Of a stretch of 64,000 bases of DNA, positions 30,241 to 55,505 are shown one piece after another. The position numbers were made by a program, and so were the translations under genes. Within the stretch, counting starts at the first letter, position 1. Each line of letters starts with the position of its first letter. The notes under the pieces are model-generated. The model worked only from the letters and a program-made list of their open reading frames with translations, searched no databases and had not been told where the DNA came from. Source of the DNA: Trichoplax adhaerens (Eukaryota; Animalia; Placozoa); the NCBI RefSeq assembly GCF_000150275.1, contig NW_002060944.1, positions 1,226,911-1,290,910 of the forward strand, written 5' to 3'.

Positions 30241-30313
30241 GAAATCACTATTCACACCCTGACTAATACAAATACATACGGTAGCATAGGATCATCAAGC
30301 TACTTAATTTATC

Positions 30314-31453
30314 ATGGCGATTAAGAATTCAACTGATGATGTCGCCATTTTTATAGGGATTTTTTTTCCATTCTCTTGCGTAGCAATTATTGGTAACTTA
30401 TTTATCTTAATTACCATACGTACGACTAAAACTTTACATAAACCAACATATTATCTGATAGCCAATATGACTCTTGCGGATGCCATTTGTGCAGCATCAA
30501 TTTTAATATATACTATAGCTTTAGGCGTCTTTGAATCCATGGACTGGCCAATATCATCATTGCGTATCGTTTGCAAGTTCTTTGGGCCATGCCAGTTAAT
30601 TACTTATATTACTGCAACACAAACTCTAACTGCAATGAGCATCGAAAGATATAACGCAGTAATCCATCCTCATCCAAAGGTCACCAAAAAGAAAAATATA
30701 CATTTGATAATAATTATAACTTGGATAATTGGAATAATAATGTCGATCCCTTTTATCCAGATTATTACCGCTGTGCCTCAGATGCATCTTCCATGCGAAG
30801 TTATCCAATATAAGAATTCCACTTATAATCAAGTTTATGCTGGCATCATAATTACCACTCAATATATAGTACCGTTAATTATTATGTTTTATACTTATGG
30901 ATACCTCATAACTCGTTTACGCTATCGCCGTCGCCATTCACAGATTTTTCGTAGTAAAAAAATCATGCCAAATAATCAAAATGAACTTAAACGAACGATA
31001 GCCTATGCACTACCCTATATAACTATTCCAACTCACCTACAGCAAATACGCCGAGCGAGACACCCTGGTAAATATATCAGTGATGTTATTAAGATGGCGG
31101 TTCTTGTTACCATTGCTTTTATGATACTGGCTTTGCCTTGGACTATAGTATTAGCTTGGATGACTATTCAGCGTCAAAATTTAAGTAAAATTTATAAACA
31201 TAGTAAAGGAGTGCTCATCTATCTTGTTCATCTATCGCAAACTTCATTTCTCCTAACAAGCTTATATAATCCTATACTTTTTTGTGTTTTTAATCAATAT
31301 TTTCGACAGCGACTGCAACAAATCTTTTATCTACTATTTAGAAGAGTTACTGATCATTTCCGTAATTTATTCCATCGCTTCCAAGAGCATACACCGCTTA
31401 AAGATGACGATGAAAGTTCTAGTATTTCATCGCGCTGTACATCCAATTGCTAG
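30314..31453 (+). CDS. Intronless rhodopsin-like (class A) GPCR, peptide-receptor-like, 379 aa
   Basis: Seven hydrophobic helices with GN (TM1), NMTLAD (TM2), C at the top of TM3, SIERY, TM4 W..P, YIVPL (TM5), F..xxLP (TM6) and YNPILF (TM7). Confidence 0.93.
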   Translation: MAIKNSTDDVAIFIGIFFPFSCVAIIGNLFILITIRTTKTLHKPTYYLIANMTLADAICAASILIYTIALGVFESMDWPISSLRIVCKFFGPCQLITYITATQTLTAMSIERYNAVIHPHPKVTKKKNIHLIIIITWIIGIIMSIPFIQIITAVPQMHLPCEVIQYKNSTYNQVYAGIIITTQYIVPLIIMFYTYGYLITRLRYRRRHSQIFRSKKIMPNNQNELKRTIAYALPYITIPTHLQQIRRARHPGKYISDVIKMAVLVTIAFMILALPWTIVLAWMTIQRQNLSKIYKHSKGVLIYLVHLSQTSFLLTSLYNPILFCVFNQYFRQRLQQIFYLLFRRVTDHFRNLFHRFQEHTPLKDDDESSSISSRCTSNC

Positions 31454-34810: not shown

Positions 34811-37079
34811 ATAGTAAATAGATTGACTAAATAATGATCCTTATGGGAAAGGTTTTTTGTACGGAAATAGTACTTCGATGATTGACAATTGCGACATTAT
34901 CTCTACTTTGATACAAAAATAGAACATCAGTTTAACATCAAGGATTCATACAAGTATATTACTTTGTAGACTGATACGACCGAAATAAATTCGATATCAA
35001 TTTGTGTAGCGGTATACATTTCTAACATACATTATAATTTATTCTCTAATTTCTCGGTTTTGATTTCCATAGCAACTGTTAACAAAGAAACGCTATTTTC
35101 TAGCACCAAATGGAGCTCTGATTTAAAAAACCGCTTTTAGATAAAGAAGATATTCTGATTACATGAAGGAGGAAACCAAAGCTGCATACTCGTAATCTAC
35201 ATTAACTTGAAAAGACTACAGTGCAAGCAATATTGCAGTATTGTAAAACTGTGACAGCTTTGATTATATGTATATATTTGTTACGGAACTACGTTTCCAA
35301 TTTTCAGCTTGTGTTACAGTAGTTCTCTCATACTGATCATCGCATTATATTTATTGGTATTAAAGGTCTGTTGGACAATGACGGGCTACCGTTATATTTG
35401 TAATTTAAGATATGTATCTCGAATGAGTCATTAAGTTGGTATAATATGAATTCTGTCAATAATATTAAATGACAGTAAAGAAGATACGTGTTCAGGTAGG
35501 AATTCTTGCTTAGATCATACCATGAGCTATATTTTAACTTGTCATAATATCTTATAGTACTTAAGTTAATAATACGGTTTGACCAAGTAACAATCTGTTA
35601 TGTTTGTAATGCTTTAGCTGCGTTGCCCTCCTTTGATTGGATGTCTGCTGTTCACTTGCTTTATGCTATCTTATTTTAAGTCTAAGCAGAAAAGCTAGTT
35701 ATTGTTGCTTGCTATTACTTTTTCTTTTTTGTTATAGACTGCCAGTGAGAACTACTAAAATAATGTCGTAACCTAAAGCAAATTGTATTTTTAGCGACTG
35801 ATCTTTTGAGTATATCTACGAGGGCAGTTGTAGATAGTTTATGCCACTTAGACAGTGGTGATAATATTATATATCTCTAAGTTGATGAAAACATCCTAGC
35901 TTCTTTACACTATAATAATGATGTTGTTTGGTAATTGCTGAGTTGAATCTACTAATAGATGAGAAGCTGCAGATTGAAATTTAATTAATCAATAGCGAAA
36001 TCAATGAATTCATGTCATTTCTATTACTTACAAAGTAAAACCTAAGTCTATTATAATCGCTTATTTGTTTTCTATAGATTACCTGCTATGTCACCTTTAA
36101 TCGTCTGTAAATCCTAGTCTTGATATTAATACTTCAACTACTATCATTTAAATTTTAAAAATTGAATAATGGAAAGAGAAGATTATTATGCGAATAACTA
36201 TCTCATGGAACTTCATTTATGCTTAGGATACATACAGCACCTGTCCATGTAGCTAACAAGTATGGGTGGCTATCAAATAATTGTAATTCTATTTGACTGC
36301 TATGGGATCTTTTAATATATACAGTTAATGACAATTTTGCATCCGTAAAATCTCGTAAAGCTCAAATGAACGTAAAAACAATAATTTCAACTAAAATGAC
36401 ACAAATTTTTGTATGAATAAGAACATCTTATTCGGTATCTACATAGAACTCATGCTTCCAAAGTCTAAAGCCTTTCATTACAGCCAATTTATATGGTACT
36501 TTATCGAAGGTATTTGTTGAGAAAGAGTAAAGCATTTCCTGGATGATTCTCAAAGACATGAAATTTCTATTTTTTGTGTCAATGGAAGCAAACAGTAGCA
36601 TAGATAAACATATTCTCTGAGTCTATCCATATTCACCAAAGGCTACTATCCAATTAATCAACATTTAATTTTCGACTTGTTCTAATAACTGTCAATTAAA
36701 AAATTAAATGTTGCATATCGTGGTGCAAATGTATTCAAGATCGTTATCTAATTGCAATTTTTGGCCCTACTCTTAGCTTTTAACGCCAAATGAGAGTTTG
36801 TCTTATACCTTCAAAAGTATCTGTTGTCGAATTTGTTTTTTATGTAAAATATAAATCAATCAATGATTATTTTATTGCGTACAAATACGGTATTGAATTG
36901 CCGCTATAAGAATGCTGCAATACAGATATATTGGGTAGAATCAATACGAAACCACAATTGCAATCATGAATAAAGTAATTCAATCAACAAATAAAGAAAG
37001 AAAGAATATTTAGTAAAATTATTTTTGCCGATTTACAATGAGGATCGTTAGATATTCATGCAGGAAGTCCTCATTTCTA

Positions 37080-37560
37080 GCTAATATTTCAATTTAATGT
37101 ATTTTAAATTTTGATACTATTAATAATTGAATATTTTGATTACGCAGCTTTAATTTGGAATGATATTTCTGACAGAATATTTAAATTGGATGCAGCTTAA
37201 CAATATACTAATGTATGCCATTCCTGATAAATTTAACGCTGTTTAATTTCTTGTGCTATTATAATTGAATATTTCGATTAGGCAGCTTTACTTTTAAATG
37301 ATATTTCTGACAAAATACTTAGATATAAGAGTGTATACTATTTCTAGTAATATGTACAAATATGACTCAGTTTAATATTCTATGCTACCCGTGGTGGGAT
37401 AATCAGATTTGACGCAGTTTAAATTTCTTATTTCCGGTCGAATATTTTTATTAATGCAGTTGAACTCGTATGTTATTTCTCATTCAAAATGTAGATATAA
37501 CATAGCTCAAATTGATACTATTTCTGGCTTAACACATACATTTGACGCAGTTTAAATTTT
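37080..37560. repeat. Decayed AT-rich tandem repeat
   Basis: ataattgaatattt.gatta.gcagcttta..aatgatatttctgaca at ~37122 and ~37261; tttgacgcagtttaaattt at ~37407 and ~37541. Confidence 0.6.
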
Positions 37561-38111
37561 ATATCCTTATTGATTGAGCCGTTATGAATAAGTAAGGTAC
37601 CGATATTCAAAGACTTGAATCACCGGAAAGAAATTTTCCAACAGTTTCTTCAAGCAATCTATGATGTTGCCTATAAATTAAGATAGCATTGCGTTGACAG
37701 GAATTACTTTCTTTCCTGATGTACAGTAGTTTTATTTCCGCTGTAGCTGCATTAAATGAGAATAAACATGTGGTAGTACCGGGCAACGTACGTATATAAA
37801 TAGAAATCAACATTTACTTAACCATTAAACTTTTCGATTCCTCTTCCTGAACAATCGCTGATAAGTTAATTGTGACATAGATGGGATGCTTTAACTTAGT
37901 GCCTTAATCGATTCCAAGTAGACAGGGTTATCTAATTTAACGACCAACCTTGCAAACTGGATCTAAGCGTAATCACAATCCCCTCTATCTTAAGAAATTT
38001 ACTTTCCGTATGATATTATAAGCCAATTGAACTAAGAATCCAAGTAAGTGACGAAAAATGATGACCACTAATCATAATCTATCTGTGATACCGAACACTA
38101 ATCCAGTATGG

Positions 38112-38863
38112 ATGGAATCCAATGGATTACCACAAAGTAATTTTGCTACTTTGAATCAAAATACATCAGCGAGATTGCCATCCATAAAAAAGAAGGTATG
38201 TAGGGAAGCATTGGAATAAATGTTTAGATATCAGTTACTATTTCCTTAAAAGTCTTGGCATAAAATCTTATTTCGCAAACGACATTATATTATATTTTTA
38301 ATGATCATTGCATGATTTTCATAAAGTAATAGCCTCTAGTCAAATTAAAATAATATTTTAAATTTTTATTGAAACCTTTCATGGTTTTCATTTCTAAACC
38401 TTATGGCTATCTTCAATGGTACTAGTTGTCCTTATTATTAGTTGTTTCATTTCAATGAAAATAATTTAATTTATTAAATTTCATATTTTTTACGTCATAT
38501 CTTGAATCTATTGATCAGCTAACTTGAAATGAAATTGTTTTGATCTAGATCGATTATTCTAAATTTGCGATGATGCCTATCGAAAAACCAGTTAAGAAAA
38601 TCTTACAACCACTATCGCAGTTATCCCCTAAAGCAAGCATCAATTCAACCGATCATAAAATTAGCGATGATACCATTGACGATGAGTCTTGTTTCACTTC
38701 AATGTGGGAGCAAAATACCATTAAGATAAAAGAAGAGTTTCTGGCTGCCTATCTAATAGAACTAGAAGCTGAAATTGCTAAGTTATCAGCTGAAAATGAT
38801 GTTTTACTCAATCGATTACGCCATTGGCAGTTCTACCAAACTCGTATGCAGCAAATGAAGTAG
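38112..38863 (+). CDS. bZIP-derived leucine-zipper protein lacking a basic region, 2 exons (38112-38195, 38549-38863), 132 aa
   Basis: Exon 1 MESNGLPQSNFATLNQNTSARLPSIKKK ends at a phase-0 GTATGT donor; TAG acceptor at 38548 joins in frame. The C-terminus KIKEEFLAAYLIELEAEIAKLSAENDVLLNRLRHWQFY aligns without gaps to the zipper of the 53537 gene (KLKDNQVASRATWLEEENVKIKAENAALREELACWRYY). Confidence 0.75.
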
Positions 38864-39059
38864 TAATGCCAGATATCCAAGTCCTTTTAGGCTGGTGAAA
38901 ATAATCTTCAAATCGCTGATGATAGCCCTTCAGTATCTACTATTATCACTATATTACTGATATTGTTATAAAAGAGAAATTAAAGAATACATGGAACTTA
39001 TTTTCATGATCTTCTCGCAAAATTGTAGTTAACGTATATTAAATTCTTTTCAATTTTAA

Positions 39060-39800
39060 CTAATTTGTAACATGTTACAGATAACTTTCAGTAAAGTTTA
39101 AATGCCTATGTAGTGAGTACCTTAAATTGGGTATGACATTTGCTTGTAGATGTTATATTATCGCTATAAAGCATAAGAAAATGTAGTTTTCCTACTATCT
39201 GTGATGTGTGTAATGAAGAATTATGTTCTATTATTTCTGTCTACGACGGTAAACCACTTTCAGCAAAGGTTAATAATTATGTAGTACGTATCTTAAATTG
39301 CGTATAATATTTGCGATTAGATGTTATTTTATCGCTTTATAGCATTTGAATATGTAGTGTTCCTACTATTAGTGGTGTATGTAATAAAATAATTATGTTC
39401 AATTATTTCTCTCTACCATTGTTTAAGTTGAGTAGTGTTCATCTTAATTGAGAGAAAGGAGCAAGAAAGAAACGTAAAGAAAGGCACTACTAAAACTGTT
39501 ATCTCTGCCGAAAAGATGGATAGATCCAACTGAGAATCGCGCAGACATAAGAGTCACCACCCTCAGTTAGAAATAAGTGTAATAAAATAATTATACTATG
39601 TTATTTCTCTCTATGTCGGTAAACATTGCGATAGTCCACGTCTTAAAATAAAAGTCAAGAGCAAGAAAAAACGTAAATAAAGGCACCAATGAAATTATTA
39701 TCCCTGCTAAGAAGATGGATAGATCTATCAGAAAACTGAATACAGATATAGCAGCCGCCATCCTCAATTAGCAATGGGAAGTGAGAAAGTAATAGAGGGT
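39060..39800. repeat. Overlapping ~175-200 bp diverged tandem duplications
   Basis: cttaaattg.gtat.a.atttgc..tagatgttat.ttatcgct..agcat..gaa.atgtagt.ttcctactat at ~39121 and ~39292; gagcaagaaa.aaacgtaaa.aaaggcac..aagatggatagatc at ~39459 and ~39659. Confidence 0.75.
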
Positions 39801-42219
39801 TTAATGAGTCGACACTCAACCGGAAATAGTTGCCACACACAGGTTAACATAAATTACTTAGAAGAAATGGATTCTTGATTATAGATTATAAATCTTAGAA
39901 CTCAACGATAAGTACATTTAGAGCTACAAGCAGGCCTTTAGAAGAACGATAGCATTAGAGCGTTATTAGCGTTACCGCCATAATATTTATTGAGTTCTAG
40001 AGTGGAAATGAGCAGCATTTACAGCTTAAAAGATAGAATACTGTTGCGATAGTGTTGGTATCGTAAAGCTTATACCTTTTAGCTCAGCAATTAAAATGTA
40101 ATAAAGTAGAGGTTTGTCCTCACATCGAGCATATTTAGATACTTATATGTAGTTGGCTATGTACCTTATTATCGCTAAATTTAGTAGAAACTATTCTTAG
40201 TATGCTTCATACTGAGGATATAATTGTATATTTCATATTAAGACCTCAAAGCGGCGTTTTCAGCCACGAGAAGTAGAAAAAGGTAGAATAATGTAGGATA
40301 ACTTGTTTGCATACTTACTTGTGTTATGAGCTCTAAGCTAGGAACAGTGTTAACGAGAATAACTTGATTTCCTAGGTGATTTTCCATATATATAGTTTGA
40401 ATCTATTTATGAGATTGACAGTCGCTAAGAGTATATAAAAATATTCATAGCTGCGATTTTTAATCCTGCATTTAATAGTGAATAATTGCATTATCAGTTC
40501 ATGTTATAAGATGTTGATGAAATCAGTGTGATCAAGCTCGGATAATATTCCTATATTCCCATTCATATGAAGTTCTTTGATCGTAGAGCGTAGCACATGA
40601 TAGTACACTACCTGCTTTTTCTTTCTCATTTCTATATAACTCTCTTCTACTATGTATTCTATATTCTAAAACAATTCTCAATCATTTATTTTTGTTAGTT
40701 AGTTCTGCGACTTACCCGTGTTTTCGTTAAGTTATTCGCTGTGTCTGTTCTGTTCTACTCTGCCTACTCAATTCAATTCAATCATCACGTTTTTCCACGC
40801 TTTAGCCTTACAGAGTTTTTTATAACACTGACAGCAATCAAGAATATTATATCTCTTTATTATGTGTATTTTTTTGCTGTTATGATAGGCTGATAATTAT
40901 TCCAAACATCATCCGTTACATGCTATATACTACGGTATAGTTAAGGTGGCATATAATGTCTAAAAATAATATTTACCAATCTATGAAGAATTTTTTACCA
41001 GATATGAAAGGTATTATGCAAGAGCACTAACTTTCTATTTACTCATATCAGATGTTCTGTTATTGTAAAGATTCTATTTACTTTTGTGAACAAATGGCTT
41101 ACCTCTTCAATGAGGATGGTTTATATCTTGTCATTAGCTATGAGTAAGACAAGATTGACTGATTATTAGCATACCAAAGGAATAATCTTTCACTGCTTGT
41201 TATGTTTAAATCAAGAAGAGTCTTAGCGATTAGCTAGCCCAACAATCTTCTCCTTGATAAGAGGATCGACTAGGCAATGGAACTTAAAAGTCATCAAGCA
41301 TAGCCAACAAGTTAGAGATGATGGGAGTCAGTACACAGCGAAAAATACGCATAAATACTTCCAAAATGTTACCGACTAATCCTATTTCCTATCCTAAATA
41401 TGTCAAGCATGTAAAAATGTATATAAAATTGTAGAGTAGGATTTTTATTGAGCCTAAGTGAGAAAAGACAGCCAGTCTACAATAAAGTATGCTCTTTTCT
41501 AGTCTGTTACATAAAATGATGATGATTCATAGTCCGGCATCAAAGTTTAATAAACTATAAAGTGGATCTACAACTTCGAAGGAAGTTCGAGTAGAGTAAC
41601 CATTAATTAACATCCTTGTAGAACTTCTTCAATCATATAAGTGCAGTTAGTTCTACAGAACCATTAGAAAGCTCATAAAGACCTGGCAGTCCATTGCCTA
41701 TCATTATACATTAAAACAAGACATCTATAACTCTACAAATATTAACAAGAATTCAAGAAAAATTTTCGATATAAATTATCTACTTTATGGACGTACGCCG
41801 TTCTGCAATAAAACAAATTTTCAGAAGCCTACTGATCATGATATTACAACTACTACTATTAATAAAAAGCCTTTCTATTGAGTTTGGTAATAATGATTAT
41901 AATCCGTTCAACTAGAGAGTTAACACTCTAGGAAAGGAAACGTTCAGTTCAGTTATGTTTTTAATTTCTATTCCTTCTATTTACTTCCTTAAGATGAACG
42001 AAATCTGTTAGATTTCAACCTTAACCAGAGTAATAATAGATAACTATACCATTAATTGCGGTAATTTATGAAATATCTATCTATCAAGGCATTACCGAGT
42101 ATTCCTTTCTGGACGTCGACATACAATATTGATTCCGTTAATATTTACCTTATATCCTTAGACTAAGAGAATTGATTATTTAATATTACAGTCTCCATTT
42201 CCGGCATAGACTGTAGAGT

Positions 42220-45678: not shown

Positions 45679-46321
45679 TTAGGCAAGTGGAAGGTAATTG
45701 GAACGAACAACTTGGCTAGTTTTAGGATAGTAATAAACAGGCTGTTGATAATAGTGAACCAACTCATTCTTCAATTTCACATTCTGCACCTTTAATGTTC
45801 GATGAAGTCGTTCCAATTCGATTACACGATTAATCATCTGAGAATTGAGCAATTTCTTCTTGACACGGGATCGAGCTGCAGATTCATTATTACGCTTTCT
45901 TTTATTCCAATATTTGGAATCTTTCTGCTCACTTGGTACAGGAATTTTGCTTTTTCGAATGAATGATGATTTAATAATTGTGCTATTGGCAGAGTAATGA
46001 CATGATGGCTCGATAGAGCTATTAGATGCAGTTTCTTCCTTCTGCATTGTTCTCATAAGATTAATATTGTCTGGTCGGCTGATCTAGTCATAAAAACGAA
46101 GTTATAAAATTGAAATTTTTTAACTATTTATATTGTAGAAATTACTTTCGAACGAAATACATGATCAGACCAGAAATTAATTTTTAGCCATAAGTCAAGG
46201 AGTTATTCTATCATGTACAATTAATTAAAATTACATTTTTCATGCTTGGGTCTACTAACGGAGCTTCGGTATCGGCGTATAGAGTCGACTCCGGTTGATA
46301 GTTTGAGGAAGAATTTACCAT
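45679..46321 (-). CDS. PAR/NFIL3-type bZIP transcription factor, 2 exons (46321-~46260; ~46080-45679)
   Basis: KSKIPVPSEQKDSKYWNKRKRNNESAARSRVKKK (PAR-type extended basic region with invariant N and R) followed by a leucine zipper. Upstream exon MVNSSSNYQPESTLYADTEA with GT donor; two in-frame splice solutions exist, so the junction is uncertain. TA-rich TATA-like run at ~46373-46383. Confidence 0.88.
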
Positions 46322-53536: not shown

Positions 53537-55505
53537 ATGACGGATCGTAACCAACAAAATTGTCTGTCTTGCAGTACACTATCACCTGAGGTAAGCAGTT
53601 TTGGACTACATCTTAAATTAGTAAAAAATCTCTTACGTTAAGAATATTTGTATTAAAAATTTTTACATTTGACGATGATCATGTTGTTGATATCTATAAT
53701 TAATCAAAGCATGCTTTTAATTAACCTTACTTCCAAAGTTAACATTATGTATTTTTTGGCTTTCCTTAATAAGCTTAACAAAATAAGTAGTTCGTAAATC
53801 ATAATTGTATTTAAAATTGATTTGTCTCGAGTCAGCGAGTTAAATTTCTTACTACATGCTTGCTCAATATATTACTGTATCCTGTTGAGTTGCTTCAGAG
53901 CAATAAAAATTGCTTAGTTCTCTATTCAGTGGCTCGGAATGTTCTAAGCTACTTTATTCTTAGCGGCTAGTTTTATACATCAACTTTCTGAATCAATTTA
54001 TTGAGTTAATTACTTAATACTCTATTTGAATTGCGATAACTTATAACACTTGCTTCATCAAATCTGTTCCATGCTATTCCATCGGACCTTATAAAGGTCT
54101 AAATTTGGGGTACAGCCTTTCGTCTGTTCAGAAATTGCTAGTTTTTACATGGCTTCCATAGATAGTTACGTTATTGCTCATTGCAAAATACGCAACAGTA
54201 ATCTATGAATCATAATTATTACAGTGTCACTACTAGAACATAATGAATGATTACGATACAAGTTGCTTGCACCCAGCTATCAGATATTGCTAATTCAGGC
54301 GCTCATCATTTTTTTACCATAAAATAAATTTGATACTTAATGATGATTAAGTATCACCATAAGTTTTCTGACGAGTAATTGTTATCATTGAGAAACATTG
54401 TGTTAATGAAGTAGAATATTTAAATTATCGAATAGTAATGATAGGCAGATAATATTTAATTAATTGGAATATTTGTAAAAAGAAACATTTATCAAGTCTG
54501 ACAAAACATGAAAGATATTAAACAAAATCAATCATTGGTTTAAGTTGATTGATTCGGCATTCCAATTAACAAGTTGGCAATTAATTAAAACAACTTTGAC
54601 CTGTCATTGAGTAGACGTTAATTTATTCAAATTATGCCATTTAAAAATATAATATCAATGCATATACATAACAATAAGAAGTAGTTTGCATACATATGAT
54701 TGTTATTTTAATGTCAGACGACGTAACTATTAAAGTAGGACACGATGAAGTAAACGGTTGCATAAATAAAAATAGATATTAAAAAATGATCACTTAAAAC
54801 ACGCAATTGCATCATAGACAATAAAGCAATAGAAAGCATTGCTGCTACATTTGTATAGCGCGTTAGTATAATCATAAACTATTCGATAGCACTAATGAAT
54901 GTAGAAAATACTATCTATTATGGGTAAAAAAATTGCAAAACGAACTTGTATTTGAAAATAAAGATTGATCAATTTTATGTCGATATTGCTATTTTAACAA
55001 GTTTTTATTTTTGATGTTTTAGTATTGCTTTATGCATAGAATGGACGTCATGTCACAGAAATGTCTATCAATTAATCCACTTCACAACGGACAAATTTAT
55101 CCTACATTGAAATCTAATTTATATCCAACCTTACCATCTCATGAGGGTAACATGGACAACGTCAGGATTGTTGTTGGAGCTCTAGATAAGAAATCAGCAA
55201 ATCTGTCTGCCAGCAAGAAATCCAAAACGCCGGTCCCAAATGATCGCAAAGATGACAAATATTGGGACAAAAGGAAACGAAATAATGAATCGGCTAAACG
55301 CTCTCGCGAAGCAAGAAAGTTAAAAGATAACCAAGTTGCCTCACGTGCTACTTGGTTAGAAGAAGAAAATGTTAAAATAAAAGCAGAAAATGCCGCTTTA
55401 CGTGAAGAATTAGCTTGTTGGCGTTATTACTTTAGTCAGCCTTTTTCAGCTCAGTCCAATCCTAAGCCTATTTCTGGTATACCGCTGAAACCTTATCTAT
55501 TTTAA
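53537..55505 (+). CDS. PAR/NFIL3-type bZIP transcription factor, 2 exons (53537-53590, 55023-55505), 178 aa
   Basis: Exon 1 MTDRNQQNCLSCSTLSPE ends at a phase-0 GTAAGC donor; acceptor at 55022 in frame. KKSKTPVPNDRKDDKYWDKRKRNNESAKRSREARKLK plus zipper LEEENVKIKAENAALREEL is typical of HLF/TEF/DBP/NFIL3-family bZIPs. Confidence 0.93.

What the first reader, a model, noticed from the sequence alone, without database searches (positions are those of the whole stretch)
38112..38863. Natural 'acidic-zipper' paralog: bZIP with the basic region replaced by an acidic segment, a candidate dominant-negative inhibitor
Seen: the zipper aligns without gaps with both neighbours (K-x-K..LE-x-E..K..AEN..L...L..W..Y with the 53537 gene; IELE and the a-position Asn with the 46321 gene). 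The gene has the same plan of a short first exon plus a domain-bearing second exon, with an intact frame and splice sites. Where the neighbours have DDKYWDKRKRNNESAKRSR, it has DHKISDDTIDDESCFTSMWEQ: no invariant Asn/Arg and a net acidic charge. Known: engineered A-ZIP dominant negatives replace the basic region with an acidic extension, and natural inhibitors that dimerise but cannot bind the normal site exist (Id for bHLH, CHOP for C/EBP). Inference: this protein heterodimerises with the clustered PAR-type bZIPs and blocks DNA binding. Its two g-position Glu residues face Lys/Arg at e positions of both neighbours, but only Ser/Leu in a homodimer, which would favour heterodimers.
Basis: partly seen in the sequence, partly recalled or inferred. 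Interest (0 to 1): 0.9.

Follow-up and report, generated by a model that had tools for sequence, protein, structure and literature searches.

The report
Zipper-only bZIP paralog in Trichoplax
A small, expressed and evolutionarily maintained Trichoplax gene keeps the dimer-forming leucine zipper of the neighbouring PAR-type bZIP transcription factors but has lost the DNA-binding part, so it most likely pairs with such factors and switches them off; that activity has not been tested.

Summary
The window is Trichoplax adhaerens. The feature is TRIADDRAFT_52979, an uncharacterised gene of about 150 aa.

**Observation: confirmed.**
- The gene has two exons, and RNA contigs from three runs in two studies carry the 38195|38549 junction.
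- Its five-heptad zipper is most similar to that of the neighbour TRIADDRAFT_52980 (14/38 identical; BLASTP E 1e-5; hhalign E 1.6e-5; heptad-preserving shuffles p about 1e-4).
- There is no basic region and no Pfam bZIP hit. The stretch in its place has net charge -6.

**It is not a pseudogene.**
- A deeply diverged placozoan keeps the open frame: pN 0.25 against a saturated pS of 0.85.
- Between the two loci only the coding core aligns as DNA.
- It evolves about four times faster than its neighbour. The three differences from Trichoplax sp. H2 are all amino-acid changes.

**Interpretation: partly supported.**
- A zipper-only, Id/ZPR-like titrator of the clustered PAR bZIPs is the best reading, at about 0.5.
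- The specific A-ZIP analogy is weak, because the acidic stretch is not amphipathic in the heptad register.
- Salt-bridge counting favours pairing with the 45679 gene. The 55032 gene should prefer its own homodimer.
- Complex prediction with the 55032 gene gave only weak support.

This is a new variant of a known regulatory kind. No searchable paper names it, and the one placozoan TF table I could search lists both neighbours but not this gene.

The parts
37885..38057 (+). 5' untranslated part of the transcript (approximate start); holds a 3-codon upstream ORF at 38010
   Evidence: RNA-run contigs start at 37885 (X5), 37986 (X9) and 37997 (X6); sequence
38058..38195 (+). Poorly conserved N-terminal part
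   Evidence: contigs end exactly at 38195
38196..38548 (+). Intron, 353 bases, GT..AG, phase 0
   Evidence: Joint 'skips 353, GT..AG' in X5; loose ends in X6 and X9 match the other exon; no RNA contig inside
38549..38863 (+). Coding exon 2 (104 codons + stop)
   Evidence: (100% to TRIADDRAFT_52979)
38603..38626 (+). LQPLSQLS motif (exon-2 residues 19-26), identical in the deeply diverged ortholog; function unknown
   Evidence: alignment
38651..38719 (+). Acidic stretch where a basic region would be (exon-2 residues 35-57; net charge -6); its C-terminal half (ESCFTS-W-QNT) is conserved and predicted helical
38720..38839 (+). Leucine zipper (exon-2 residues 58-97): d = I58, L65, L72, L79, L86, W93; a = L69, I76, N83, L90
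   Evidence: AlphaFold2 helix over residues 91-148 of P0001 with pLDDT above 90 in the zipper
38864..38991 (+). 3' untranslated part (approximate end)
   Evidence: contigs reach 38896-38991
45679..46321 (-). Neighbouring PAR-type bZIP gene ('n45'; exon 1 46321-46235, exon 2 46083-45679, 163 aa): candidate partner
   Evidence: 163-aa gene in Trichoplax sp. H2; listed as DBP/HLF/TEF-type in PMC10580291 supplement
53537..55505 (+). Neighbouring PAR-type bZIP gene TRIADDRAFT_52980 ('n55'; exon 1 53537-53590, exon 2 55023-55505, 178 aa): closest paralog and candidate partner

Best explanation
TRIADDRAFT_52979 is a placozoan-specific offshoot of the local PAR-type bZIP cluster. It arose from a duplicate of a gene like TRIADDRAFT_52980. 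It kept the short first exon, the phase-0 intron and the five-heptad leucine zipper. It lost the basic DNA-binding region, by deletion or by overwriting.

Shown:
- It is transcribed and spliced.
- It has been kept under purifying selection.
- It has no basic region.
- Its zipper carries the cluster's own specificity marks: Asn at the third a position, Trp at the fifth d position, and aromatic residues after it.

Inferred:
- The roughly 17-kDa protein forms parallel coiled-coil dimers with the clustered PAR bZIPs. Salt-bridge counts favour the 45679 gene most. The ancestral partner was possibly the 55032 gene.
- Such a dimer has only one basic arm and so cannot clamp the palindromic PAR site. 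The protein would therefore titrate these factors, in the way Id does for bHLH proteins or LITTLE ZIPPER does for HD-ZIPIII.
- The conserved helical stretch in front of the zipper (ESCFTS-W-QNT) may add contacts or charge repulsion against DNA. It does not look like an engineered A-ZIP extension.

My confidence that it is a selected, zipper-only bZIP derivative is about 0.85. The figure below is for the inhibitor mechanism.
For: - **Identity and expression:** 100% match to TRIADDRAFT_52979. Spliced RNA contigs occur in three runs from two studies, and the intron is uncovered.
- **Homology of the zipper to the neighbour:** BLASTP E 1e-5. hhalign of the two orthologs against nine PAR bZIPs gives probability 79% and E 1.6e-5.
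- **Closest relative in register:** the score against n55 is 61, against 27 or less for eight other T. adhaerens zippers. Shuffle p is about 1e-4 or less.
- **No rival family:** the only other hit in 1.8 billion representatives is a repeated bZIP-type zipper fragment.
- **Same gene plan in all three genes**.
- **No basic region**.
- **Selection:** the ortholog from the deeply diverged placozoan has an intact frame. pN is 0.25 against pS 0.85, Fisher p 2e-18. In the zipper pN/pS is 0.17.
- **Coding-only conservation:** only 38690-38829 aligns as DNA between the two loci.
- **Specificity marks:** the a3 Asn is shared only by the three clustered genes among the ten zippers read. The deep ortholog has Asn at both a2 and a3, as n55 does. 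g Glu75 and Glu82 face Lys/Arg of both neighbours.
- **Structure:** AlphaFold2 predicts one helix from exon-2 residue 46 to the end.
- **Complex prediction with n55:** weak support. The score is 0.48 and the best of 3 controls is 0.00. That mark was reached by 51 of 78 solved complexes and 2 of 108 mismatched pairs. At 0.60 or under, it was reached by only 5 of those 78 and by all 4 mismatches that passed (of 180). The runs agree in at least 78% of contacts, and the partner's pLDDT is at least 69.
Against: - No binding or inhibition data exist, and co-expression with the neighbours was not examined.
- n55 should prefer its own homodimer: 8 attractive g-e' pairs against 3 attractive and 1 repulsive with the candidate. 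In T. adhaerens, Ile76 faces Asn at a2.
- The candidate's own core (L, L, L, I, L, N, L, L, W) looks good enough for a stable homodimer.
- The acidic stretch is not amphipathic in register. Its charge is only -3 in the deep ortholog.
- The protein evolves fast. dN is 0.31 against 0.07 for n55.
- All three differences from Trichoplax sp. H2 are amino-acid changes and none is synonymous, at a rate equal to that of the intron.
- A pass in complex prediction for two zipper relatives may only reflect likeness to solved bZIP dimers.
- No PAR-site enrichment was found near the gene.
Confidence: 0.5

Rival explanations
1. It is a zipper-only protein that works mainly as a homodimer, or with non-bZIP partners, in a new role unrelated to inhibiting the PAR bZIPs. 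It would be a coiled-coil adaptor that happens to descend from a bZIP.
For: - The a/d core is more hydrophobic than the parent's. Leu65, Leu69 and Ile76 stand where n55 has Val, Ala and Asn.
- There are conserved motifs outside the zipper with no bZIP counterpart: LQPLSQLS and ESCFTS-W-QNT.
- Hydrophobic residues (F49, W53, I60, F64) lie on the outer b/c/f face, which could bind something else. This is read from the sequence with the register.
- The sequence evolves fast.
Against: - The zipper keeps the cluster-specific a3 Asn and the d5 Trp. The deep ortholog keeps the double Asn of n55. These are pairing determinants expected to be lost if pairing with relatives no longer mattered.
- A homodimer would have no attractive g-e' pairs.
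Confidence: 0.25
2. It is a modulating partner rather than an inhibitor. Heterodimers with a PAR bZIP would still act on DNA, at half-sites or tethered, or in the cytoplasm. The acidic-plus-aromatic stretch would serve as an activation or cofactor-binding motif, much as CHOP heterodimers acquire other targets.
For: - The conserved stretch mixes acidic and bulky hydrophobic residues (D, D, E, F, M, W), a composition typical of acidic activation motifs. This rests on my own knowledge and the sequence.
- The stretch is predicted helical.
Against: - The candidate contributes no basic residues at all, so DNA affinity of a one-armed dimer should be very low. This follows from established knowledge of bZIP-DNA complexes.
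- Two of the three H1/H2 differences fall in this stretch, including Ser to Pro, and a third allele has Glu to Lys.
Confidence: 0.1
3. It is a true natural A-ZIP. The acidic helix zips onto the partner's basic region and extends the coiled coil, so that the heterodimer is more stable than either homodimer. This is the reader's specific mechanism and a special case of the best explanation.
For: - Net negative charge in all three lineages: -6, -6 and -3.
- The helix is predicted to continue 19 residues upstream of the first zipper Leu.
- The principle is established for engineered proteins (PMC5662769).
Against: - The a/d positions of the stretch are polar or charged, so there is no hydrophobic seam in register (register).
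- The charge is not well conserved.
- The stretch is the site of recent amino-acid changes.
Confidence: 0.12
4. It is a decaying duplicate: a transcribed pseudogene whose open frame is chance.
For: - No Pfam domain.
- 3 non-synonymous and 0 synonymous differences from Trichoplax sp. H2, at about the neutral rate.
Against: - The frame is intact in three lineages.
- pN/pS is 0.30 overall and 0.17 in the zipper, with synonymous sites saturated (Fisher p 2e-18).
- Flanks and intron are unalignable while the coding core aligns.
- Splicing is correct.
Confidence: 0.03

Closest known systems
PAR-type bZIP factors (DBP/HLF/TEF group), here TRIADDRAFT_52980 and the unnumbered neighbour at 45679-46321
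   Same: - Homologous five-heptad zipper, and the same two-exon plan with a phase-0 intron.
- Same chromosomal cluster.
- Shared Asn at the third a position, and a Trp/Tyr-rich zipper end.
   Different: - No basic region, no YW-KRxRNNxSAxRSR signature and no Pfam bZIP hit.
- Evolves 4 times faster overall and about 11 times faster in the zipper.
- Not listed among the transcription factors of placozoans in the supplement of PMC10580291, which lists both neighbours.
Engineered A-ZIP dominant negatives (A-C/EBP, A-CREB, A-ZIP53; PMC5662769)
   Same: - A zipper of a given bZIP, preceded by a net acidic stretch in place of the basic region.
- The expected outcome is a heterodimer that cannot bind DNA.
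   Different: - A-ZIP extensions are Glu-rich and amphipathic, with a designed hydrophobic seam that zips onto the basic region.
- Here the seam is missing and the charge is modest and variable.
Id proteins (HLH without basic region) and plant LITTLE ZIPPER microProteins (PMC9638782)
   Same: - A small protein encoded by its own gene, made of the dimerisation domain of a transcription-factor family without the DNA-binding part.
- It is expected to titrate its relatives.
   Different: - The family differs: bZIP, not bHLH or HD-ZIPIII.
- It is restricted to Placozoa as far as the searches reach, and sits in tandem with its presumed targets.
- Its activity is untested.
CHOP/DDIT3 (from my own knowledge)
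   Same: A natural bZIP-family member that dimerises with relatives and blocks binding to their normal sites.
   Different: CHOP keeps a recognisable, though altered, basic region and is detected as a bZIP. It can direct heterodimers to other sites. The Trichoplax protein has no basic region at all.

Membership tests
bZIP transcription factor (Pfam bZIP_1 / bZIP_2) | Basic region with the invariant N-x7-R signature immediately N-terminal of the zipper | tested here: not met
   No Pfam hit at E up to 10, while both neighbours score 43 and 52 bits on bZIP_2. The aligned stretch has 1 basic and 7 acidic residues.
bZIP transcription factor (Pfam bZIP_1 / bZIP_2) | Leucine zipper: heptad repeat of Leu at d positions in one continuous helix | tested here: met
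   d = L65, L72, L79, L86, W93. AlphaFold2 predicts a helix with pLDDT above 90 over the zipper.
bZIP transcription factor (Pfam bZIP_1 / bZIP_2) | Sequence homology to bZIP domains beyond coiled-coil composition | tested here: met
   BLASTP E 1e-5. hhalign E 1.6e-5 with probability 79%. Heptad-preserving shuffle p about 1e-4.
PAR subfamily of bZIPs | Extended basic region with the two adjacent Asn residues and the upstream YW/Pro-rich flank | tested here: not met
   Absent from the sequence. Only a possible remnant Trp aligns with the YW motif in hhalign.
PAR subfamily of bZIPs | Closest relatives are PAR-type zippers | tested here: met
   The best in-register match among ten T. adhaerens zippers is n55, then n45. 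n55 and n45 are classed DBP/HLF/TEF in the supplement of PMC10580291.
A-ZIP-like inhibitor | Net acidic segment replacing the basic region | tested here: met
   Net charge is -6 in H1, -6 in H2 and -3 in the deep ortholog, against +5 for n55.
A-ZIP-like inhibitor | Amphipathic extension that continues the a/d hydrophobic seam over the partner's basic region | tested here: not met
   Extending the register upstream gives a/d residues K37, D41, D44, C48, S51, Q55, I58 and E62. The design rule is taken from PMC5662769.
A-ZIP-like inhibitor | Heterodimer more stable than either homodimer; abolishes DNA binding | not testable with these tools
   Only indirect evidence is available. These are the g-e' counts and a weak-support complex prediction, score 0.48 against control 0.00.
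microProtein / Id-like titrator | Small protein consisting of the interaction domain of a larger regulator family, encoded by its own gene, without the DNA-binding domain | tested here: met
   149-150 aa. It has its own spliced transcript. The zipper is homologous to the neighbours' and there is no basic region.
microProtein / Id-like titrator | Binds its relatives and lowers their activity | not testable with these tools
   Needs pull-down, CD, EMSA or reporter assays. The complex prediction is weak.

The most novel reading that the evidence does not exclude
Placozoans evolved, by tandem duplication and loss of the basic region, a natural counterpart of the engineered A-ZIP. Its acidic helix would engage the basic region of the clustered PAR bZIPs, giving a heterodimer that outcompetes DNA. 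This would be an Id-like off-switch for the bZIP family in one of the simplest animals.
Probability: 0.12. Interest if true: 0.8.

Novelty: new variant of a known kind. Interest (0 to 1): 0.55.

Why it matters
Dimerisation-domain-only paralogs that titrate transcription factors are a recurrent regulatory device. Id does this for bHLH proteins, and LITTLE ZIPPER does it for HD-ZIPIII. A separately encoded bZIP paralog without any basic region is not, to my knowledge, a described class in animals.

This case would show the same logic arising independently in the bZIP family, inside a three-gene cluster of an animal with very few cell types. The partners are next door and few: at least twelve bZIP loci were detected in the genome. 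That makes the dimerisation network small enough to measure completely.

The case also shows that domain-based transcription-factor surveys miss such regulators. The gene carries no Pfam domain and is absent from the one placozoan TF table I could search.

Tried and rejected
- **Pfam scan of exon 2:** no family at E up to 10.
- **PDB sequence search with the two-ortholog profile:** nothing at E up to 10.
- **ESM Atlas look-alikes:** only unnamed clusters under 0.9, not informative.
- **Own-genome six-frame search with exon 2:** only itself, so no further zipper-only copies were detected.
- **Word-indexed protein searches and the exhaustive representative search:** only the T. adhaerens/H2 cluster and one deep ortholog. 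One further hit was a 419-aa protein with a four-fold repeated bZIP-type zipper fragment.
- **Metagenome scan with the ortholog alignment:** 128 pattern matches, none confirmed.
- **Rfam on 36000-57000:** nothing.
- **PAR-site motif TTAYGTAA in the window:** 12 found against 12.75 expected. There is no clustering at the gene, so no sign of a feedback loop.
- **Papers:** no text names TRIADDRAFT_52979 or 52980. The 'bZIP' hits in PMC12013895 are the dye BZiPAR. The 2018 Trichoplax cell-atlas paper was not found under the id I tried, nor by a search for words of its title, so cell-type expression could not be looked up.
- **Beta-TrCP-like degron in ESCFTS:** considered and dropped, because Trichoplax sp. 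H2 has Pro at the first Ser.
- **Bipartite nuclear localisation signal across the exon junction (KKK-12-KPVKK):** considered and dropped as a conserved feature, because the deep ortholog lacks it.
- **Exon joining:** Whole-protein steps used the database protein P0001 returned, and exon-wise references were used elsewhere.

Full report
**Where we are.** The window is scaffold C1413:1226911-1290910 of a 105.6-Mb, 1414-contig eukaryotic assembly. Exon 2 of the feature is 100% identical to 'uncharacterized protein TRIADDRAFT_52979 [Trichoplax adhaerens]', 149 aa. The nearest bZIP gene on the + strand is TRIADDRAFT_52980, 178 aa.

- The sequence shows an ATG-led first exon that ends AAG|gtatgt at 38195.
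- An acceptor tctag|ATC lies at 38549, and the frame is open to the stop at 38861-38863.
- Contigs of RNA runs laid on 36000-41500 cover 37885-38195 and 38547-38991 and leave the intron empty.
- One X5 contig bridges the junction (skips 353, GT..AG).
- An X6 contig that ends at 38195 continues with the first 15 bases of exon 2.
- An X9 contig that begins at 38547 is preceded by the last bases of exon 1.
- These are three runs from two studies. All are contigs, so nothing can be said about expression level.
- The transcript reaches back to about 37885. The NCBI models for T. adhaerens and Trichoplax sp. H2 (149 and 150 aa) agree.

**It is a bZIP relative without a basic region.**
- Pfam finds nothing in exon 2 at E up to 10. 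The two neighbours (45679-46056 on the - strand, 55032-55505 on the + strand) hit bZIP_2 at 4.5e-11 and 5.1e-14.
- BLASTP aligns residues 59-96 of exon 2 with the zipper of the 55032 gene without gaps: 14/38 identical, E 1e-5.
- In a six-frame search of the whole window that zipper is the only non-self hit below E 0.9, at 8e-4.
- A profile of the two orthologs aligned to a profile of nine PAR-type bZIPs gives hhalign probability 79% and E 1.6e-5.
- I anchored ten T. adhaerens zippers on the invariant basic-region Arg and compared them in register. The candidate scores 61 (BLOSUM62, 39 positions) against n55, 27 against n45 and 26 or less against the rest.
- Shuffling the candidate within heptad positions never reached that score in 20,000 trials, and reached the identity count in 1e-4 of them.
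- The similarity is therefore more than coiled-coil composition.
- The exhaustive search of 1.8 billion representatives found no rival coiled-coil family. It returned only the protein itself, one ortholog, and a protein with a repeated bZIP-type zipper fragment.

**All three genes share one plan.**

| Gene | Exon 1 (codons) | Intron (bases, phase 0) | Exon 2 |
|---|---|---|---|
| Candidate | 46 | 353 | carries the domain to the stop |
| n45 | 29 | 151 | carries the domain to the stop |
| n55 | 18 | 1432 | carries the domain to the stop |

**What replaced the basic region is ambiguous.**
- hhalign instead aligns the candidate's Trp with the YW motif of PAR bZIPs and places a 12-residue deletion over RNNESAKRSREA.
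- Either way the N-x7-R signature is gone.
- The 23 residues before the zipper have net charge -6 in T. adhaerens and in H2, and -3 in the deep ortholog. The equivalent stretch of n55 has +5.

**It is not a pseudogene.** The comparison uses two metagenome contigs, L014 and L015.
- *Ortholog.* L014 comes from ENA sample ERZ23499115, and both contigs carry an ortholog (P0002; 63% identical in the best local alignment, 57% over exon 2). Its frame extends upstream to an AG acceptor at the position homologous to the T. adhaerens exon-2 start.
- *Same organism as control.* That sample also holds the ortholog of n55 (P0005, 87% identical). This indicates the two contigs come from one other placozoan lineage.
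- *Candidate rates.* Synonymous sites are saturated. pS is 0.85 and pN is 0.25, Fisher p 2e-18. pN/pS is 0.17 in the zipper and 0.23 in the acidic stretch.
- *DNA alignment.* Only 38690-38829, the core from ESCFTS to RLRHW, aligns between the two loci (73.6% over 140 bases). The intron and flanks do not align.
- *Control gene n55.* pS is 0.67, dN is 0.072 and dN/dS is 0.04. The bZIP domain has dN 0.014.
- *Conclusion.* The candidate is constrained but evolves about four times faster overall and about eleven times faster in the zipper.
- *Short time scale.* Trichoplax sp. H2 (RDD39867.1, on L017) differs at three coding sites. All three are non-synonymous (T42A, S47P and A74T in exon-2 numbering). 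There are also three intron differences, in a region that is 98.9% identical overall. This is compatible with weak constraint or adaptive change, but the counts are too small to decide.
- *Third allele.* A third allele in run X5 adds E54K.

**The zipper read as a pairing code (inference).**
- The d positions are L65, L72, L79, L86 and W93. The a positions are L69, I76, N83 and L90.
- Asn at the third a position occurs only in the candidate, n45 and n55 among the ten zippers read. The deep ortholog has Asn at both a2 and a3, exactly like n55.
- Since a-position Asn prefers Asn (established bZIP knowledge), this points to pairing within the cluster.
- The full count is less favourable for n55. 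There are 3 attractive and 1 repulsive pairs in the heterodimer, against 8 attractive pairs in the n55 homodimer, plus an Ile-Asn mismatch at a2 in T. adhaerens.
- With n45 the heterodimer (3 attractive, 0 repulsive) beats both homodimers (2 and 0).
- The candidate's core is more hydrophobic than n55's, so a homodimer is plausible as well.

**Structure predictions.**
- AlphaFold2 on the database protein, without an alignment, gives one helix from residue 91 to 148. This corresponds to exon-2 residue 46 to the end. pLDDT is above 90 over the zipper and about 66-85 over ESCFTSMWEQNTIKIK. The N-terminal 90 residues are of low confidence.
- Complex prediction of n55 residues 88-165 with candidate residues 70-149 returned 'weak support'. 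The score was 0.48 and the best of 3 controls was 0.00.
- That mark was reached by 51 of 78 solved complexes and 2 of 108 mismatched pairs. At 0.60 or under it was reached by only 5 of those 78 and by all 4 mismatches that passed (of 180).
- The runs agree in at least 78% of contacts and the partner's pLDDT is at least 69. No interface was given.
- Close relatives of a true partner often pass this test, so the result shows likeness to bZIP dimers, not binding.

**How it compares with A-ZIPs.**
[quoted passage not shown] This adds 2-5 kcal/mol (PMC5662769).
- Extending the candidate's register upstream puts K37, D41, D44, C48, S51, Q55, I58 and E62 at a/d, so there is no hydrophobic seam.
- The hydrophobic residues of this stretch (F49, M52, W53, I60, F64) fall on the other faces.
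- The stretch is acidic and probably helical, but it is not built like an A-ZIP extension. Its charge is not well conserved.
- The better analogy is the microProtein class, meaning Id for bHLH and LITTLE ZIPPER for HD-ZIPIII (PMC9638782).

**What is known.**
- No searchable text names the gene.
- The bZIP survey that included Trichoplax identified bZIPs by Pfam screening, blastP and HMMs (PMC4736632). A screen keyed to the bZIP domain would probably miss this protein, which has no Pfam hit.
- The transcription-factor table of the four-species placozoan atlas lists Tadh_TriadT52980 and Tadh_wf_g1735.t1 as DBP/HLF/TEF-type. It lists the H2 genes 008292 and 008293, and adjacent pairs in two Hoilungia species. 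It does not list 52979 or TrispH2_008294.
- A third lineage (Logan contig L018) keeps the n45(-)/n55(+) arrangement.

**Verdict.**
- The identity as a selected, expressed, zipper-only bZIP derivative is well supported, at about 0.85.
- The inhibitor mechanism is the best reading but is untested, at about 0.5.
- The specific A-ZIP mechanism is unlikely as stated, at about 0.12.
- This is a new variant of a known regulatory kind, and of moderate interest until binding is shown.

Noticed in passing
window 39090-39700: Two or more tandem-like repeat units of about 185 bases lie just downstream of the gene. One RNA-run contig (X7, 39093-39625) covers them at far higher word depth (91.7) than the candidate gene (6.2). 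There is no Rfam match. It could be a repeat family or a separate abundant transcript.
   Followed up: partly
window 45679-46321 (- strand): The middle PAR-type bZIP gene (29 + 134 codons, 163 aa) appears to have no TRIADDRAFT model: the flanking genes are numbered 52979 and 52980. It is annotated in Trichoplax sp. H2 (163 aa, L017:17630-18272). It also appears to be Tadh_wf_g1735.t1 in the supplement of PMC10580291.
   Followed up: partly
window about 54713-54751: The Trichoplax sp. H2 model of the n55 ortholog (P0013, 197 aa, named 'Hepatic leukemia factor') begins with residues that match an ATG-led stretch here. This lies inside what is the intron of TRIADDRAFT_52980. It is either an alternative first exon or a model error.
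   Followed up: no
window 38672, 38687, 38708, 38710, 38768: Coding polymorphisms seen in RNA-run contigs are all amino-acid changing: T42A, S47P, E54K (two bases in one codon) and A74T. Run X5 holds two alleles side by side.
   Followed up: partly
L014:86-124: In the deep placozoan ortholog a 13-codon ATG-led stretch resembles the start of the T. adhaerens MESNGL segment and ends at AAG|gttttg. Reading on hits a stop, so exon 1 would be much shorter there. There is no RNA evidence.
   Followed up: no
L017:2239-3378 (about window 30300-31450): A rhodopsin-type GPCR gene (7tm_1) lies about 7 kb upstream of the candidate in Trichoplax sp. H2. By the collinear 98.9% alignment it also lies there in the window.
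   Followed up: no
P0003 (419 aa, not in the window): The only distant hit of the exhaustive protein search carries four copies of a bZIP-type zipper start (AYTVELEAEVAQLKEENEQLR) in a low-complexity protein. It is probably a mis-assembled or repeat-expanded sequence.
   Followed up: no
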